Positions 11,197 to 19,341 of a stretch of 59,484 nt of DNA are shown here, one piece after another (position 1 is the first letter of the stretch; the number at the start of each line of letters is the position of its first letter). The notes under the pieces were generated by a model. It was not told the DNA's origin. It worked only from the letters and a program-made list of their open reading frames with translations, and made no database searches. The DNA is taken from positions 1-59,484 of the forward strand of contig JBLDXI010000117.1 of the NCBI GenBank assembly GCA_047495785.1. The letters are read 5' to 3'. Origin of the DNA: Lepidodermella squamata. Its lineage: Eukaryota; Animalia; Gastrotricha. Position numbers and translations under genes: made by a program.

Positions 11197-12987
11197 ATGC
11201 TTACAAAGTCGTGCTATAGCAAGTCTGATTTGGAATTTTTTGACCTGCATGGTTGCCCGCCTATTATTGGCCCTCCTATTCCAGCAAGTGAGTCTCGTGC
11301 GTGGATGATTAGGAATCCAGACAGTAGAGCAATCTTTTTGCGTCTAGAAGCATGTTATCAAGACGCGAGCACTCAGCAGGCGTTACGTGAGATGCTTGAA
11401 GAAGATGCCAAGTCTTATAATGATGATGGTACTCCGCGTCTGCCGCCGAAGAAAAAGCGTAAAAGGCGTAGAAATCGTGGTAAGCGTGCTAGATCTTGCG
11501 CTAATTCTGCCGCGCCTGAATCTTGTGTTAGTGATACAGCCTCTGTTCTTGATGCTAGTGATGGTACATCTGAATCTGACGGTTCTGATACCGCTGACAC
11601 GGTTGTTGATCTTGGTACAGGGCGCGAACCCACCCCTGGCGTTGTGGCTGGCTCAGAGCCGCCAATGCCTCTATGCACTCGCTTTATTTCTAATCCTGGC
11701 CCTGGTTATTCTTGCGCTTCTGGCGTAGTTTCATCGCCTAGTAATAATCCTTGTGAACGTGGTGATTGTCCAATGGCCGTAGATTCAGCTCAGGCTTCGA
11801 ATTCTGCTTCTGGCGTTGTGGCTGGCTCAGAGCCGCCAATGCCTCTACGCATTCGCTCTGCTGTTGAGTCTGCGGTAGAAAATCCTGTAATTTTCGAGGG
11901 ATCTGGTTCCCGCGATTCTGGCTTTGTGATTTCATCAGGCGATGAGCTTTCTCAAACTAGTGAAATTTCTGATAACTGTCTTATTGTCATAATTGATGGT
12001 GTTTCAACAGCGTTTAACACGCCGTTTCTTTGTGTTAAGGAATTGCATCGTGTAGCGCCTACTGTTCGGCACAGCAAGGTGTGGATTTTTCCTCGCGGTG
12101 GTGTCGGCATTATGTGTGGTGATGCCTCGAGTGTGAATGCCGTCTTATCTAAGGCTGGTTGGCCTGATAATGCTTTTGGCGGGTCGGTACGCCCGCATCG
12201 GCCGTCGAAATTCGAACAGCCGCGCGTCGCCAATAACTTACGCATTCGCTCTTGTGATGTAGACCTGCGTAAAGCTGTCTGCACATTTTTCCGCGGCGTT
12301 TCCGCTACCGATATTCTTGAAGATTGGTTTGACGTGATTGACGAGGCTTGGCCGATTCCTAATTTGGCTAATTGCTTCGGTGTGAAGTGTAAATCAATTA
12401 GCATCTGTGAACAACTAGTTTCGTGCGGTCGTTATTTTTTCGGCTTTCATGTTAAGGCGCGGCCGTGGCACTCAACTCCTGTTGTAGAAATTTGTAATCG
12501 CTGTCTATGCGTTGGACATTTCGCAGCGCAATGCCAAAGCGTTCTCAGATGCGCTACGTGTGGTGAAACTGGCCATGATAGCCGTGTTTGTGACAGCACA
12601 TCGCAGCACTGTGCGCGGTGTGGCAACGCCCATTCGGCCTTTTTTCGCGGCTGCCCGCATGTTAAAGCTGAGGCCCAACGTCGCCGCAAGGCGGAGCTGG
12701 CCGAAGCTCAAGCGATCCATAGCAGTAGTAGCAATGATGCGTCCTTTCGTGAAGACGTAGTCGCAGGAGCGGCCGTGCAAGTTCCTCATCTGCCGCCAGT
12801 TTTTCGTGATGATTTGCGCCAAGAAGCTGTTACGTGTGGTGCTTCATGTCTCGAATCTTTTCGCGATATTATTGCTTCGCAGGCAGCAGAAATCGGCCGT
12901 CTAACTAACATGGTAGAGCAATTATCTGCTGTTATTCAGCGTTGTGGGCTGGTTTCATCGGCCGTCAACCATGTATCTGTTCCGTAG
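11197..12987 (+). CDS. Gag-like ORF1 nucleic-acid-binding protein of element A (596 aa, three CCHC knuckles)
   Basis: CNRCLCVGHFAAQC, CATCGETGHDSRVC and CARCGNAHSAFFRGC match the Jockey/I/R1-type ORF1 triple knuckle. Basic NLS-like PKKKRKRRR. Confidence 0.9.
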   Translation: MLTKSCYSKSDLEFFDLHGCPPIIGPPIPASESRAWMIRNPDSRAIFLRLEACYQDASTQQALREMLEEDAKSYNDDGTPRLPPKKKRKRRRNRGKRARSCANSAAPESCVSDTASVLDASDGTSESDGSDTADTVVDLGTGREPTPGVVAGSEPPMPLCTRFISNPGPGYSCASGVVSSPSNNPCERGDCPMAVDSAQASNSASGVVAGSEPPMPLRIRSAVESAVENPVIFEGSGSRDSGFVISSGDELSQTSEISDNCLIVIIDGVSTAFNTPFLCVKELHRVAPTVRHSKVWIFPRGGVGIMCGDASSVNAVLSKAGWPDNAFGGSVRPHRPSKFEQPRVANNLRIRSCDVDLRKAVCTFFRGVSATDILEDWFDVIDEAWPIPNLANCFGVKCKSISICEQLVSCGRYFFGFHVKARPWHSTPVVEICNRCLCVGHFAAQCQSVLRCATCGETGHDSRVCDSTSQHCARCGNAHSAFFRGCPHVKAEAQRRRKAELAEAQAIHSSSSNDASFREDVVAGAAVQVPHLPPVFRDDLRQEAVTCGASCLESFRDIIASQAAEIGRLTNMVEQLSAVIQRCGLVSSAVNHVSVP

Positions 12988-13508
12988 CTTATTTTCAGCC
13001 GTGTGCAAGTCGCTTTATACGCATGAGTGCTTTCGGAACTGCTGTGCTTCGTTGGCTATTGTTATGGGATCTGTTTCTCAGTGTGGTGTTACATGCTTCA
13101 GTTGTTCGTCGCTTAAGGTGGCTGTTCACACGGCGACCTTTGTCATGTATCGCGCTCCCGGGGCGGAACTACTGCTCGCCGCTGGCCTTTGCCTCGGTGC
13201 TGGCAGCCGCCCGGGGTTTCTTGGTTCTTGAATTTTTGAAATGTTGGTGCTTTCGCCTATTCGCCGGGGGATGTAATGTCAGCTGGCGTTTGGGAATGAT
13301 TGCTTGAGATTCGGCTTGGCCGTGTTTTAGCCGTGTTTCTGTTTACGGCGTTGGTACTCCGAACCAGAATCATCAGGGCGTTGAAAGCGGCGCTCTGCGC
13401 TGTGATTCGCCAGATGGCGCGTTGGTTGTCCGCAGCCTAGTTTAGGACGACAACTGAAGCGTATCGGGTCGTGGTTATGATTGGGTTTCACGATAGCCTG
13501 CGAGGTGC

Positions 13509-14060
13509 ATGTTTGTTTCGATCGCTTGGTGTGTTACGACTTTGCCTGGCATTGGTGCCACTGGTGCCTTTTTTCGTAGTTTCCTGGCAGTTGTTCAGCG
13601 TTGTAGTTCATCCTGGCCTGGTTGTACTTCTGGGTATCGTAGTTCTTCTTGGCCTTGCTGTGCTTCTGGCTCTTGTAGCTCTTCTTGGCCTGATTGCGCT
13701 CTTGGCTGTTGTAGTTCATCTTGGCATGGTTGTACTTCTGGATATCGTAGTTCTTCTTGGCCTTGCTGTGCTTCTGGTTCTTGTAGTTCTCCTTGGTCTG
13801 ACTGCTCTGGTTCTCGTAGTTCTTCTTGGCCTTGTCATGCGTCTGGTTCTCCTAGTTCTTCCTGGTCTTGCTGTTTTTCTTGGCCTTCTCGTCGCTTTCG
13901 GTCTGGCTATGCTGATGGCTCTGGTTCTCTTTGGCCTAGCGGGGCTTCTGGGCGTCGTACATCTTCTTGGTCTTGTGGTACTCCTTGGCCTGGGCCTTGT
14001 AATGGAATTGGGCCTCGTGGTTCTTGGTCTAGCTGTTCTTCTGTTCGTCGTTGCTGGTAG
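13509..14060 (+). CDS. Possible Ser/Cys/Trp-rich repeat protein (183 aa, CSSSWP repeats)
   Basis: ATG start. Several repeat-to-repeat differences are synonymous in this frame, but other frames are also open. Confidence 0.3.
   Translation: MFVSIAWCVTTLPGIGATGAFFRSFLAVVQRCSSSWPGCTSGYRSSSWPCCASGSCSSSWPDCALGCCSSSWHGCTSGYRSSSWPCCASGSCSSPWSDCSGSRSSSWPCHASGSPSSSWSCCFSWPSRRFRSGYADGSGSLWPSGASGRRTSSWSCGTPWPGPCNGIGPRGSWSSCSSVRRCW
13600..14045 (+). repeat. Degenerate ~36-nt tandem repeat inside element A
   Basis: Units such as TGTAGTTCATCCTGGCCTGGTTGTACTTCTGGGTAT and CGTAGTTCTTCTTGGCCTTGCTGTGCTTCTGGCTCT. Confidence 0.85.
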
Positions 14061-14183
14061 CGGATGGGCCCCGGGTGGCGACACGCTTCGGCGGTGGCCC
14101 GGGGCGGCAATTGCGGTGTTAATCGTCGTTGCAGGCAGCGGTTGGACCCCGGGTGGCGGCACGCTTCGGCGGCGGCCCGGGGT
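14046..14183 (+). repeat. Two 78-nt-period GC-rich repeats, each a hairpin capped by cUUCGg
   Basis: GCCCCGGGT...CGC-TTCG-GCG...GCCCGGGGC (14068-14105) and ACCCCGGGT...CGC-TTCG-GCG...GCCCGGGGT (14146-14183). Confidence 0.75.
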
Positions 14184-14343
14184 GTTGGCGCTGTTGGCTG
14201 TCCTCGGCTGTTGGCTGCCCTTGGCTGCTTTATGAACTATTGTAATATTGTAATGTGGCTAACTCTTTGCTATGATCACCCAACTACGCTTGTCTGTGTA
14301 ATTTTATCGGTTTGGTTGGTCAAATTTTTCTGAATTCCTAATC

Positions 14344-14387
14344 AATAATCTGCTATTTCTCGATATTATTCTGAGGTTAGTGTCCGT
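14344..14387 (+). ncRNA. Diverged SL-a-like gene carried inside element A, 5' part (continues 22451-22482)
   Basis: AATAATCTGC...TTCTGAG|GTTAGT, then after removing B, TGCTGTCT..TAGAATGCGCGG. The same blocks occur in the same order in SL-a. Confidence 0.6.
14377..14387 (+). repeat. Left TSD of element B copy 1 (11 bp)
   Basis: TTAGTGTCCGT is repeated at 22440-22450, directly after the poly(A). Confidence 0.92.
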
Positions 14388-14553
14388 TTAATATCTGCGA
14401 TTGAATATTAAATTTTCTGAGGTTAGTATCAACACCACTTCGACTGTTGTTTGCTAGTTTGCCGGTTCTGCGTTGACCATATACGCTGTTCATTATTGTT
14501 TAAATAAAATAATTTTCCTTTTTGAGATTTCGCTGTCTAAGCGAATTTTTAAA

Positions 14554-17500
14554 ATGTTAATGTTTTCCGCTGTCGGCGCTGGGCGCGACGAGTTGTCTTT
14601 ATTGAAAATAGAAATTTCTGAAAATTTTAAAAAAGTTGTCTTAGTTCCTGCTACCGATGCGAGCGAGTGGCTGGCCGAGGCTGACGAGGCTGTCGATGCT
14701 GATTTCCCGTTGTTCGGTGGTGATTGCGTTGCTAATACGCCACCCCGAGCGACGGTTGCAGGCGAGATCGACGATGCCCGAGCTGAGGCTGATGTCACGG
14801 CGTTCGGCAGTGCCAGCGTTTCGAAAACGCCACTCCGATCGCCGGCTGCATTGCTTCGCGATAGCAAGAACGAGCAACGCCCTGGAAAAAAAGAGTTTCC
14901 CTTAATTTTCTTTTTATTGACTGGGCTAGCCGGTTTTTATTTTGCTCTTTATGGCTCCGAGCCGGTTTTCGACTCTGTTTTTGCTCGGTCGTCAGGGCCT
15001 TCTGCTCGGGCGATCGAAGACGTTGTTGATTTTCACGGCACGTATTTATTGCCGAAGCCTTATGCGTCGGTAGTAGTAACCGCTCCTAGCGGATCACGGC
15101 CGGTTTTTAGCTCTGATTTTTGCCGTTTGCAAAGGCCTTCTGCTTCAGCAGACGTGTTTTTTATGGAATTTCTTTTTGATTTTATGTCGAAGCACTCAGC
15201 GTCGGCATATGTAGCCGCTCCTAGCGGATTCCCGACCGATCGCGTCGGTGTAGCTGTAGAGTTGTCGAGCGCATCCGATTTTGCGATGCCCTTAGACGTC
15301 CGCGGCCGCCCCTGCGACTTGTCATTTTTTCCTGAATTTTTTGATAATTTTTGTCCGCTGTCCGCTTTTTCCGGTCAATTTTCTCTGACCGTCCTTTCGG
15401 ACAGGCAGCAGATGTTGTTTTCGTACTACGGTGCTGACGGCGGCACGTGGATGCGTGATAACACTGTTGTTTTTCTCAGCGGTGCGGCGCTTCACGCGAC
15501 CGCTGTCGTAACAGCTGGTGTTGTTTTGTTCGAAAAAGCGGTGTTGCTCGTATTGCTAGCATGGCGCACTGTTTGCACTGGTTATGGAGAATTCCTAATT
15601 CTTCAACTTTTGTTTACGCAGGCGGCTGGCTGTTTAGCTTATGGTATTTACTTTGTTGTTTTTGTAAAAGTTGTTAAAAAATTACAAAAATTTGCTTCTG
15701 TTTTTGATACGGATACGAGCAAGCGGCTAGCAGGCGATATCGAGGCGAATGATCGGTGCTGTTTGACTTGTTGTTTGGCATGCTGCTTGGCTGATGGTTT
15801 TACTTTTATCGCGAAAAGTAAAATTTTTAAAAAATTGAAAAATTTTGTCTTTGTTTTTGAGACGGATACGAGCGAGCGGTTGGCGAACGAGGCGGTCGAT
15901 CGAGGCTGCTTGGCTTGTTGTCTGGCTTGCTATCTGGCCGTTGGTTTTGCCTTCATCGCTGAAATTAAAATTTTTAAAAAATTAAAAAATGTTGCCTTTG
16001 TTTTCGACAAGAATGCGAGCGAGCGATTGGCCAAGGCGGACGAGGCGGTCGATGCGGACGTCACGTCGTTCGGCGGTGACAGCGTTACGCGAACGCCACT
16101 CCGATCGGCGGCTGCAACTGCGGTCGACAACGCCCGGGCTGAGGCTGACGTCACGGCTTTCGGCGGTGATAGCGTATCGAGAACGCCACCCCGACTGCCG
16201 GCTGCATTAACGATCGAACCTGAGGCTGATGTCACGGCTTTCGGCGGTGCCAGCGTATCGAGAACGCCACCCCGACTGCCGGCTGCATTGCTGCGCAAGA
16301 ATGGACAACGCCCACTTAAAACCGAGTTTTCCTTAACTTTCTTATTAGTTAGCGGGATAGTCGGGATTTATTTCGGGCTTTGTGGATCCGAATTTGCTTT
16401 TGATTTTGCCCGTTCATCAGGGCCTTCTGCTTTGATGAACGGTGACGCTTTTGTTAGATTGCCGTTACTGCCGAAGCCTTCTGCGGCGGCTCTAGTAGTA
16501 ACCGCTCCTAGCGGAACTGAAAGTGTTGACTTAGACATCGTTGGCTCGGTGGGTTCGGGACCGTCGTTACTGCCGAAGCCTTCTGCGGCGACAGTTGTAG
16601 TAACCGCTCCTAGCGGAACGCGGTCCGATAGTGTGATAGTTGCTTTTGATTTTGCTCGTTCATCAGGGCCTTCTGCTTTGATGAACGGTGACGCTTTTGT
16701 TAGATTGCCGTTACTGCCGAAGCCTTCTGCGACGGCCCTAGTAGTAACCGCTCCTAGCGGAACTGAAAGTGTTGACTTAGACATCGTTGGCTCGGTGTGT
16801 TCGGGACCGTCGTTACTGCCGAAGCCTTCTGCGGCGGCAGTAGTAGCAACCGCTCCTAGCGGACGATGCATTTCCCGCGACTTAGCATTTCCTAGCGGAC
16901 GATGCATTTCCCGCGACCTAGCATTTTCTCTTGAATTTCTCTCTATTTTGAGTTGCTGTTACGCCCCGCAGTACAGCGCGGGTATACTTGATAGCGCTGT
17001 TAGAGCGATTTTGTGGAAGATGGTATGCACTGTTGTTTTCCTCAGCGGGGCGGCGCTTCTCGCGACCGCTGTTGTAAGGATTCGAGTATTGACGGCTGCT
17101 TGTGATGTGGTGTGTGATATGGTCATGTCGCTCGGCCATTTTTGTTTCCTGTTTGGTGTTCACCCAGGTGAACGCGAACTTGTAAAAAATCACGTGAAAA
17201 ATGACAAAAATGATAGCAAAATTGATCTAAGGGATAAAGTCAGGCGTAGCGAGTCCGTAGAAAGGTCGAATTTGTTCGAGGTTCTTCGGTTGCGCGGTGG
17301 TGCCGGACGAGATGAGAACGAAGAGAGACAGAGAGCAGAAGAGGATAGAATTCGAGCAGCATGGGAAGGTGAAGGCGCTGATGAGACTGTCGAGCGGCCG
17401 CTAGACCAAGGTGAAGTCAGGGACATGATTCAAGATTTGACGGCTGGTGAAGACACGCCGATGGATCAAGGTTCGGTGAAAGGCGCGACCAGTGACCGAA

Positions 17501-19341
17501 AGCGACGTGCCGGTGATGGCATGTTTGTCAACCTTAGCGAAGCGCCTGACTTTACTGGCATGGAATCCTCGGTTTCCGAGTCAGACATGAAGTCAGCGAA
17601 GTTTTTGAAGACTGATGGTGCGAAACCGGCGGCCGAGAAGAAGACCGTGACGAGGAAGCCGGTGGCGAGAGGAAAAGAGCAGAAGACAGTAGAGGAAGAT
17701 AGCCGAGGTAGCCAAGAGGGTCAAGGAGAATTCATTACTGTGACGGCGAAGAATCGTCGACAGCCACCGGTTCAGACGGCGAACCAGGGCGGCGCTAAAC
17801 CAGGCAACTGGCGAGGCAAACCGACGATTAATTGGAAGTTGAGCGCGATGGTGGATCGAATCGATGGCCAACGATTCAATAGCGAGTATCTCATGAATCA
17901 AGAAGTTCACAGGATAGCACCGAGTGCCCGGGTTGTGAAGATGCTGCCGAAAACGAAAGGCGGTTGGCAGATTGTTTTTGCCGACGAGGCATCTATGAAA
18001 GCATTTTACGAAAGCCCGTCATGGAAAGACCCGTCAAGGCCGGCATTCGGGGCAAACGCGAACGCCCATCCTCCGGCGGCTTTAGCTGGTGAAAAACCGA
18101 AAGTTCAAGCGGACTTCAAGCTTGAGGAACGCAAAGTGAAAGCCATCGACATACCGTCGTCGGCGCCTGTTGAGGATGTAGTAAAGTACTATAAGGAGAA
18201 TTTTGGAGCAGTTTTTGTGGTGAAGCTGAAGCAGGGCAGGCCTGGCTACAGCACGTACCTTATTGAGTTCAAAACTAAGGACGAAGCGGACGCCCAACTG
18301 AGAAATGGTTTTATCGGCTTCTTTGCGTTGACGAGCAGAGTGCAGCAAGTCAAAGACTATAGCCCGCAAGTGAAAATTTGCCAGCGGTGCCAGGGTAGTG
18401 GCCACTCCTGGACGGCATGTAGCCAGACGATAACCTGTCCCGATTGTAGCGGTGAGCACTTCAGGGGCGACGAAGCTTGCCCGGTGGTAATTGCGAAAAA
18501 GGCTTGCGTTGAGCAAGGCCTGACGGACGAAGCGGCGAAGGCCAAAGTATGTGAAGCGATGCGGTGTCGCAACTGCACGCAGAAACACACCACCAACTAC
18601 GCCGGATGTCCGTACGTGCAGTATGTAAGAGATGGTTTAGCGAGAGATAAGAGAAGGCAGTTAGCGGAAGCAGAGGCGATCAGGGCAAAGGCCAAGGCTG
18701 AGGCGGAGAAACGCGCTGAAAAGCGTGTTGAGAAAACTGTGGTCAAGCCAACCACAGGAGGACCCAATGGCCAAGGGTCGGGGACGGGCAAGCCAGCACA
18801 GGGTTCGAGCCAGCGAGTAGCGGGACAGCAGTTGAGCAAAAGTCAGCGGAAGAACAGGCGAAGGCGGGTGCGTAATGCGGCTAAGAAGGCTGCCGAGACT
18901 GGTAAGAAGGCACCAGTAGTTGAGCAGGTTGAAGCCGGGGCCGAGTCCGATTCGGAGTCCGAGGCAGAGTCGTCGATGGATGTGTCGAGGATTAGCAATA
19001 GCGGGTCAACGAGCAGTCGCTTGGGTGCCAGTCAGGACGAGCGACGTCAGGATGGTTCCTTGCGTGCCAGTCAGGGCAAGGGCCGTTCGGGCAGCGAGTT
19101 GAACAGTAATTCAAAAGAGCTTTTGAACGATCTGTGGGGCCGCGCAGCAGTTGCAGCGGCCAGTGTTATTTTTTCTGAAACGTCAGGAACCAAATTTGTG
19201 GCGCAAGTAAGCTTAATTCTGTCGAAAATGGCCGTGATGAAATATCAGGGCCAGACTGATATGCAAGAATTCAGCTTCGATTTGGCATTTGAGAAAGCTC
19301 AACAGTACTTTGTGGCGATCCAAACATGCCAAGATCAGTAA
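14554..19341 (+). CDS. Element B ORF1: hydrophobic repetitive N-terminal extension, LRLRGG motif, Gag-like domain with CCHC knuckles (first ATG 14554; frame open from 14473)
   Basis: Knuckles CQRCQGSGHSWTAC, CPDCSGEHFRGDEAC and CRNCTQKHTTNYAGC. The frame stays open in both diverged copies. Confidence 0.85.
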   Translation: MLMFSAVGAGRDELSLLKIEISENFKKVVLVPATDASEWLAEADEAVDADFPLFGGDCVANTPPRATVAGEIDDARAEADVTAFGSASVSKTPLRSPAALLRDSKNEQRPGKKEFPLIFFLLTGLAGFYFALYGSEPVFDSVFARSSGPSARAIEDVVDFHGTYLLPKPYASVVVTAPSGSRPVFSSDFCRLQRPSASADVFFMEFLFDFMSKHSASAYVAAPSGFPTDRVGVAVELSSASDFAMPLDVRGRPCDLSFFPEFFDNFCPLSAFSGQFSLTVLSDRQQMLFSYYGADGGTWMRDNTVVFLSGAALHATAVVTAGVVLFEKAVLLVLLAWRTVCTGYGEFLILQLLFTQAAGCLAYGIYFVVFVKVVKKLQKFASVFDTDTSKRLAGDIEANDRCCLTCCLACCLADGFTFIAKSKIFKKLKNFVFVFETDTSERLANEAVDRGCLACCLACYLAVGFAFIAEIKIFKKLKNVAFVFDKNASERLAKADEAVDADVTSFGGDSVTRTPLRSAAATAVDNARAEADVTAFGGDSVSRTPPRLPAALTIEPEADVTAFGGASVSRTPPRLPAALLRKNGQRPLKTEFSLTFLLVSGIVGIYFGLCGSEFAFDFARSSGPSALMNGDAFVRLPLLPKPSAAALVVTAPSGTESVDLDIVGSVGSGPSLLPKPSAATVVVTAPSGTRSDSVIVAFDFARSSGPSALMNGDAFVRLPLLPKPSATALVVTAPSGTESVDLDIVGSVCSGPSLLPKPSAAAVVATAPSGRCISRDLAFPSGRCISRDLAFSLEFLSILSCCYAPQYSAGILDSAVRAILWKMVCTVVFLSGAALLATAVVRIRVLTAACDVVCDMVMSLGHFCFLFGVHPGERELVKNHVKNDKNDSKIDLRDKVRRSESVERSNLFEVLRLRGGAGRDENEERQRAEEDRIRAAWEGEGADETVERPLDQGEVRDMIQDLTAGEDTPMDQGSVKGATSDRKRRAGDGMFVNLSEAPDFTGMESSVSESDMKSAKFLKTDGAKPAAEKKTVTRKPVARGKEQKTVEEDSRGSQEGQGEFITVTAKNRRQPPVQTANQGGAKPGNWRGKPTINWKLSAMVDRIDGQRFNSEYLMNQEVHRIAPSARVVKMLPKTKGGWQIVFADEASMKAFYESPSWKDPSRPAFGANANAHPPAALAGEKPKVQADFKLEERKVKAIDIPSSAPVEDVVKYYKENFGAVFVVKLKQGRPGYSTYLIEFKTKDEADAQLRNGFIGFFALTSRVQQVKDYSPQVKICQRCQGSGHSWTACSQTITCPDCSGEHFRGDEACPVVIAKKACVEQGLTDEAAKAKVCEAMRCRNCTQKHTTNYAGCPYVQYVRDGLARDKRRQLAEAEAIRAKAKAEAEKRAEKRVEKTVVKPTTGGPNGQGSGTGKPAQGSSQRVAGQQLSKSQRKNRRRRVRNAAKKAAETGKKAPVVEQVEAGAESDSESEAESSMDVSRISNSGSTSSRLGASQDERRQDGSLRASQGKGRSGSELNSNSKELLNDLWGRAAVAAASVIFSETSGTKFVAQVSLILSKMAVMKYQGQTDMQEFSFDLAFEKAQQYFVAIQTCQDQ

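What the first reader, a model, noticed from the sequence alone, without database searches (positions are those of the whole stretch)
14388..14446. Element B starts with a 57-nt copy of its own target, beginning at the inferred SL transcription start
Seen: after the left TSD and two extra Ts, 14390-14446 is identical to spacer 1676-1732 (exon, donor and 24 further nt), although this copy is not in the spacer. It begins at the AATATCTGCG shared by both SL-like genes. Inference: B is transcribed from the host SL promoter, so full-length cDNA records the +1, which independently supports the SL gene model. Each insertion also recreates a fresh target site at its own 5' end. This parallels R2 co-transcription with 28S sequence.
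Basis: partly seen in the sequence, partly recalled or inferred. Interest (0 to 1): 0.88.

Follow-up and report, generated by a model that had tools for sequence, protein, structure and literature searches.

The report
LINE carrying its spliced-leader gene head
A jumping gene that lands in this animal's spliced-leader RNA gene carries the first 57 bases of that gene at its own front end, most likely because it is read from the host gene's promoter, a known trick of ribosomal-DNA retrotransposons seen here with a new target and apparently without a ribozyme.

Summary
Observation confirmed. 14390-14446 is an exact 57-nt copy of the SL-like gene at 1676-1732 (exon, donor, 24 nt past the insertion point), at the front of an off-target APE-type LINE copy with an 11-bp TSD plus TT. 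The head belongs to the element: copy B2 (48115) sits in a haplotype-II unit, yet its left 24 nt carry the haplotype-I alleles of B1's head. A cDNA run supports the SL model (exon-only pile-up, adapter-joined 5' ends) but puts +1 at 1675, so the head starts at +2. It also holds an unspliced exon-donor-B contig. No ribozyme was found at the head. Relatives in other organisms insert at the same kind of donor, and one carries a second exon-donor head. Best reading (0.72): B RNA starts at the host SL cap site, and the head primes the 5' junction by annealing. Not shown: B's own start site, or tandem B arrays. R2 (earwig) and melanogaster-type R1 are close precedents, and SL targeting is known for RLE-type CRE/NeSL elements. 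This scan has already noted SL-targeting APE LINEs and target-copy heads on other DNA of this genome. New variant of a known kind.

The parts
14390..14446 (+). 57-nt head of LINE B1: SL exon +2..+33 (14390-14421), donor GT (14422-14423), 24 nt beyond the nick (14423-14446), haplotype-I alleles
14388..14389 (+). TT between TSD and head; untemplated, or T plus a misread +1 A
14377..14387 (+). left 11-bp TSD of B1, starting at the T of the SLc donor GT
22440..22450 (+). right 11-bp TSD of B1, after poly(A)13 at 22427-22439
14473..19341 (+). B1 ORF1 (1622 codons; first ATG near 14557); gag-like zinc-knuckle part in the C-terminal half
19326..22112 (+). B1 ORF2, 928 aa: APE endonuclease plus RT; no RNase H or RLE domain found
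14321..14387 (+). SLc, diverged SL-like sequence in element A (upstream motif, exon, donor); continues at 22451-22482; the off-target landing site of B1
1675..1772 (+). SLa gene, haplotype I: 33-nt exon 1675-1707, donor 1708-1709, 3' hairpin 1741-1769 (also at 10130)
1652..1660 (+). CAAAATTTT-type motif about 23 nt upstream of +1, also before SLb (2124) and SLc (14321); candidate external promoter element, absent from B's head
   Evidence: alignment only, function inferred
2146..2236 (+). SLb gene: 32-nt exon 2146-2177, donor 2178-2179, 3' hairpin
48148..48171 (+). left 24 nt of B2: haplotype-I alleles inside a haplotype-II unit (element-borne, not a TSD)
48115..54180 (+). LINE B2 in a native SLa gene; RT deleted (joins 20226 to about 22248 equivalents); poly(A)10 at 54171-54180, then the haplotype-II intron
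10644..22889 (+). element A (gag-only, 20-bp TSD at 10624-10643 and 22890-22909) in SLb; hosts B1
30886..31213 (+). element C, short A-related insert in the SLa exon

Best explanation
B is a site-specific APE-type LINE that nicks between the G and T of the SL donor (shown by both 3' junctions). An ancestral insertion left a 24-nt duplication of the intron on its left. A copy in a native SL gene lies behind the gene's promoter, so it is transcribed from the SL cap site as one RNA: 33-nt exon, donor, 24 intron nt, element body, poly(A) (inferred; RNA contig shows the exon end, donor and body joined). Reverse transcription copies the head. At a native SL gene the cDNA head anneals to the identical exon and primes second-strand synthesis, giving a seamless junction that imports the element's own alleles (B2; allele mismatch shown, annealing inferred). 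At the diverged SLc site annealing fails, so the whole head is inserted behind an ordinary 11-bp TSD with two extra nucleotides, ending one base short of the cap site (B1). No ribozyme is needed, because the host start site defines the RNA 5' end only 33 nt upstream of the nick.
For: Exact 57-nt identity with a sharp upstream stop at +2. B2's unit is 1000/1000 upstream and 692/692 downstream identical to the haplotype-II unit 39655, but its left 24 nt carry both haplotype-I alleles, as B1's head does. Same head/body junction in B1, B2 and the X2 cDNA contig 14416-15884. cDNA 5' ends at 1675 and 2146 equivalents; contigs pile on exons and not on introns. No HDV-like fold at the head, none in Rfam; the single descriptor hit lies 265 nt inside and 3 of 40 shuffles give one. 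A conserved motif lies upstream of all three SL-like genes, outside the head. Relatives with 42-83% RT identity form one clade (SH-aLRT 99) and insert at or just after AG|GT donors of SL-like genes with 7-16 nt duplications (L003, L055, L059, L065); L055 has a second exon-donor head behind a 14-nt TSD. Mechanistic precedent in R2 and R1.
Against: Only one off-target copy. No raw reads, so no direct 5' end of a B transcript. In X2 a C-like contig also runs into the head (joint 14085 to 14416), so some B RNA may be read through from an upstream insert. The first 205 nt of B1 and B2 are identical although the rest differs by 4.8% (P about 4e-5), so their 5' ends may share a recent exchange and are not fully independent. 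X2 is labelled a different organism, its RNA status is a guess backed by the adapter, and contig depths are not expression levels.
Confidence: 0.72

Rival explanations
1. B RNA starts within or just before the 24-nt duplicated intron piece (own start or processing), and during reverse transcription the cDNA jumps onto abundant free SL RNA using that homology and copies it to the cap. The DNA product is the same, but B does not use the SL promoter.
For: DNA junctions cannot tell this from co-transcription. Template jumps onto small RNAs are known for LINE RTs (U6-L1 chimeras; own knowledge). Only one off-target copy.
Against: The cDNA contig already joins 6 exon nt, the donor and the 24 nt to the B body (record 13), so B RNA extends upstream of the nick. 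Native copies lie directly behind an intact SL upstream region.
Confidence: 0.12
2. The head works as an internal promoter: the element captured the SL 5' region once and now starts its own transcription at the head wherever it sits.
For: The head is fixed and the first 205 nt are fully conserved between copies 4.8% apart. Internal promoters are usual in LINEs (Pr77 of L1Tc, listed).
Against: The only motif shared upstream of the three SL-like genes lies outside the head. snRNA-type SL promoters are external (own knowledge). Relatives mostly have no long head and begin right after the host exon.
Confidence: 0.1
3. DNA-level origin: B1 or B2 5' ends arose by recombination or gene conversion between rDNA units (or by mis-assembly), not by copying of an RNA head.
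For: The array switches from haplotype I to II across element A, so exchanges occur here; B1 and B2 share an unusually identical first 205 nt.
Against: B1 has a clean 11-bp TSD, poly(A) and two extra bases, and starts within one base of the cap site. B2 would need two exchanges, one in a 46-nt window and one within about 9 nt. The same junction is in an independent 2015 run.
Confidence: 0.06

Closest known systems
R2 retrotransposons with upstream ribozyme cleavage, especially earwig R2 (Eickbush, Burke, Eickbush 2013, PMC3774820)
   Same: RNA carries target sequence at its 5' end; cDNA-target annealing gives uniform junctions; failure to anneal gives a duplicated head with untemplated bases; earwig R2 keeps a 22-bp downstream target copy with substitutions at every 5' end.
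   Different: R2 is RLE-type, targets 28S, is a Pol I co-transcript, and its 5' end is cut by an HDV-like ribozyme. B is APE-type with two ORFs, targets an SL donor, and its head runs to the host cap site with no ribozyme found.
Melanogaster-type R1 and tandem R1 arrays (Stage and Eickbush 2009, PMC2718515)
   Same: APE-type site-specific LINE whose off-target full-length copies carry upstream target sequence at the 5' end; tandem arrays form by insertion into the TSD at the 5' end of an earlier copy.
   Different: 28S target; heads are variable (6-28 nt) and end 9 nt upstream of the nick. B's head is fixed, spans the nick and reaches a transcription start.
CRE clade (SLACS, CZAR, CRE1, CRE2) and NeSL
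   Same: Non-LTR elements specific for SL RNA genes; co-transcription with the target was proposed (PMC3636483; PMC12278014). From memory, SLACS transcription was reported to depend on the SL promoter (Patrick et al. 2008; paper not held).
   Different: They encode an RLE endonuclease and insert in the exon; B encodes APE and nicks inside the donor dinucleotide.
Keno (Tx1 clade, U2-specific)
   Same: APE-type LINE specific for a small Pol II snRNA-type gene (PMC4640811).
   Different: U2 target; B's ORF2 has no C-terminal zf-RVT hit and does not group with the zf-RVT-bearing row in the tree.
Trans-spliced retrocopies (SL exon relics)
   Same: DNA copy that begins with an SL exon.
   Different: Trans-splicing adds the exon only; B's head includes the donor and 24 intron nt, so it comes from an unspliced transcript.

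Membership tests
APE-type non-LTR retrotransposon (I/Jockey-like) | N-terminal APE endonuclease plus RT in ORF2 | tested here: met
   Exo_endo_phos_2 1e-12, RVT_1 3e-28
APE-type non-LTR retrotransposon (I/Jockey-like) | poly(A) tail and TSD | tested here: met
   A13 and 11-bp TSD at B1
APE-type non-LTR retrotransposon (I/Jockey-like) | placement in a named clade (Jockey, I, R1, Tad1, Tx1) by RT phylogeny | tested here: inconclusive
   own clade of 23-24 rows; no curated references in the tree; not with the R1-like or fungal rows; quick search only
R2 clade | single ORF with C-terminal RLE endonuclease | tested here: not met
R2 clade | 28S target and 5' HDV-like ribozyme | tested here: not met
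   a very divergent ribozyme could be missed
CRE / NeSL clades | RLE endonuclease | tested here: not met
CRE / NeSL clades | specific insertion in SL RNA genes | tested here: met
   site is the donor, not the exon interior
SL RNA gene (target) | short 5' exon ending AG|GT, abundant in cDNA without its intron | tested here: met
   (contig pile-up; qualitative)
SL RNA gene (target) | exon joined to many different mRNAs | tested here: inconclusive
   one search listed only the best loose ends; exon-mRNA joins were not displayed
SL RNA gene (target) | stem-loops and Sm site | tested here: inconclusive
   3' hairpin conserved with changed pairs in 4-5 organisms; donor-spanning stem predicted; no canonical Sm site in SLa
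SL RNA gene (target) | trimethylguanosine cap, Pol II/SNAPc promoter | not testable with these tools
   needs cap IP and promoter assay
Trans-spliced retrocopy | exon only, no donor or intron | tested here: not met

The most novel reading that the evidence does not exclude
A previously undescribed, multi-species clade of APE-type LINEs parasitises the SL RNA promoter and cap site directly: its RNA is an oversized, capped, unspliced SL transcript, which gives it a promoter, an SL-type 5' end, a built-in primer for the 5' junction and a portable landing site on which further elements stack, with no ribozyme or internal promoter.
Probability: 0.45. Interest if true: 0.72.

Novelty: new variant of a known kind. 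Interest (0 to 1): 0.55.

Why it matters
It shows how a site-specific LINE can obtain a defined, target-matching RNA 5' end without a ribozyme: by sitting 33 nt behind a host start site. The two copies in one window show both outcomes predicted by the R2 heteroduplex model (seamless junction with imported alleles; whole head plus extra bases off-target), in an APE-type enzyme. Transcription of SL-targeting elements with their target was proposed but lacked data in the paper I could read. The allele mismatch gives a simple genome-wide test of homology-primed second-strand synthesis, a step still poorly understood for LINEs and relevant to retrotransposon-based gene insertion.

Tried and rejected
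Chance match: rejected (57/57, E 5e-23). True 24-bp TSD at B2: rejected (two mismatches that follow the element's haplotype). Trans-splicing as source of the head: rejected (donor and intron present). HDV ribozyme at the head: none. Head starting exactly at +1: corrected to +2. Metagenome scan with the ORF2 alignment gave only distant LINEs at 22-29% identity. PDB search gave only weak L1/R2 RT hits. Text search for the leader sequences found no paper; the host animal stays unidentified. SLACS and NeSL primary papers were not held.

Full report
Setting. The window is an animal rDNA array: 18S/5.8S/28S on the minus strand and 5S on the plus strand. Each spacer holds two small plus-strand genes that begin with the same motif and end their first 32-33 nt in AG|GT (SLa at 1675, SLb at 2146). 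Three kinds of insert interrupt them: A (gag-only, 20-bp TSD, in SLb), C (330 nt, in the SLa exon) and B. B1 (14390-22439) encodes a long ORF1 and a 928-aa APE-RT ORF2. B2 (48115-54180) has lost its RT by an internal deletion.

Observation. 14390-14446 matches 1676-1732 and 10131-10187 over exactly 57 nt and not one base further upstream. It follows an 11-nt TSD (14377-14387, repeated at 22440 after A13) and TT. B1 lies in SLc, a diverged SL-like sequence inside A, and was inserted between the G and T of SLc's donor, the same register as B2's 3' junction in SLa. So the description is right.

Is the head part of the element? The array has two spacer haplotypes. B2's unit is identical to the haplotype-II unit at 39655 over 1000 nt upstream and 692 nt downstream, yet the 24 nt on B2's left carry both haplotype-I alleles, exactly as in B1's head. 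A TSD made at that insertion would match the right flank. A DNA-level explanation needs two exchanges in windows of 46 and about 9 nt. The simplest reading is that the 24 nt came in with the element RNA. One caution: the first 205 nt of B1 and B2 are identical while the rest differs by 4.8%, which means either constraint or a recent exchange of 5' ends.

Are the targets SL genes, and where is +1? Laying three runs on 10000-15900, run X2 shows a template-switch adapter tail (recognised from memory as the SMART oligo), so it is cDNA. Its contigs pile on the bins holding the SLa and SLb exons (summed depth about 56,000 and 48,000) and are nearly absent from the intron and spacer bins (4-6). The tool warns that contig depth is not expression, so I use this only as a pattern; it is the pattern expected of trans-spliced leaders. 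G-ending adapter-like loose ends join at 10130 (8 contigs) and 10601 (4 contigs), i.e. 1675 and 2146; one full adapter joins 4 nt further up at 10597. The SLa exon is therefore 33 nt and B1's head starts at +2. That fits an RT that stops at the cap-proximal base and adds two nucleotides, or misreads it (inference). The target's 3' hairpin is kept, with changed base pairs, in the flanks of related elements from other organisms. A canonical Sm site is not evident in SLa, and exon-mRNA joins were not among the rows displayed.

Is B transcribed with the head? X2 holds a 1792-nt contig covering 14416-15884: the last exon bases, the donor, the 24 nt and the B body, unspliced, at depth 74, against 4-6 for the spacer and mostly 0-4 for A; in the DNA run X1 the spacer far exceeds B. 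So B RNA exists and extends upstream of the nick into the exon. Contigs cannot show its first base. A C-like contig also leads into the same head (joint 14085 to 14416; C aligns with A at 14032-14094), so some B RNA may come through an upstream C insert, which would itself be read-through from the SL gene. No HDV-like ribozyme lies at the head. A short motif about 23 nt upstream of +1 is shared by SLa, SLb and SLc and is not in the head, which favours an external promoter.

Relatives. About 23 proteins from environmental assemblies share 42-83% identity over the RT region and form one clade. Where both ends are present they sit at SL-like donors with 7-16 nt duplications: L003, L055, L059, L065; L065 has B's register (G|T). 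L001, L057 and L064 have SL-like intron after the poly(A). L002 lies beside 5S. Thus a 24-nt ancestral TSD is in range for the clade. L055 shows the B1 anatomy: a 14-nt TSD, then a second partial exon-donor copy (19/22 identical to L059's SL-like junction), then the body. In L056 a poly(A) is followed by a near copy of the SL intron start and then another LINE, a hint that re-made targets get used; it comes from a metagenome assembly and is weak. No B-B tandem occurs in the window.

Mechanism. Shown: nick register, element-borne head, start at +2, unspliced exon-donor-body RNA, SL character of the targets. Inferred: transcription from the SL promoter, annealing of the cDNA head to the exon at native sites, and non-homologous joining at SLc. 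Confidence 0.72. Rivals: homology-assisted jump onto free SL RNA (0.12), internal promoter (0.10), DNA-level exchange (0.06).

Comparison. It works like R2 elements with upstream cleavage, including earwig R2 with a fixed 22-bp downstream target copy, and like melanogaster-type R1, whose off-target copies carry 28S sequence at their 5' ends. Insertion into the 5' TSD of an earlier copy is known for R1. It is not an R2, CRE or NeSL member: those have an RLE endonuclease. I found no paper on APE-type SL-specific LINEs in the held library, which lacks most subscription journals. This scan has already noted SL-targeting APE LINEs, 33-nt leaders and target-copy heads on other DNA of this genome; those notes are leads, not support.

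Verdict. Real, well supported, mechanistically informative; a new variant of a known strategy. Interest 0.55.

Noticed in passing
window 14473-17280: B's ORF1 has a roughly 900-codon hydrophobic, repetitive N-terminal extension: 0 stops versus a mean of 42 in shuffles, all B1/B2 indels in frame (6, 72, 3, 39 nt); relatives lack it.
   Followed up: partly
window 17281-17301; L060:672, L062:407, L065:737: A ubiquitin-tail-like LRLRGG motif precedes the gag part in B and in three relatives, a possible cleavage site for a host deubiquitinase.
   Followed up: partly
window 10591-22985: The spacer haplotype switches from I to II across element A/B1: recombination inside or beside the insert, or an assembly join.
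   Followed up: partly
window 10143-10207 (X2 record 10) and 22473-22482: Another SL-headed cDNA contig leaves the SLa sequence at +78, the same point where SLc diverges; SLc may be the head of a further nested element rather than a gene.
   Followed up: no
window 14416 (X2 joint from 14085): A C-like transcript runs into the haplotype-I/B head, suggesting C inserts in front of B and both are co-transcribed.
   Followed up: partly
window 1822-1847 and 2346-2371: A conserved 26-nt block lies downstream of each SL gene, the second one 57 nt before 5S; function not tested.
   Followed up: no
window 22800-22889 and 31127-31213: Elements A and C share a similar 3' end without poly(A).
   Followed up: partly
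window 14390-14594: First 205 nt of B1 and B2 are identical against 4.8% divergence elsewhere; constraint or exchange.
   Followed up: partly
L056:1-143 and 5071-7068: Three related LINEs head to tail in a metagenome contig.
   Followed up: partly
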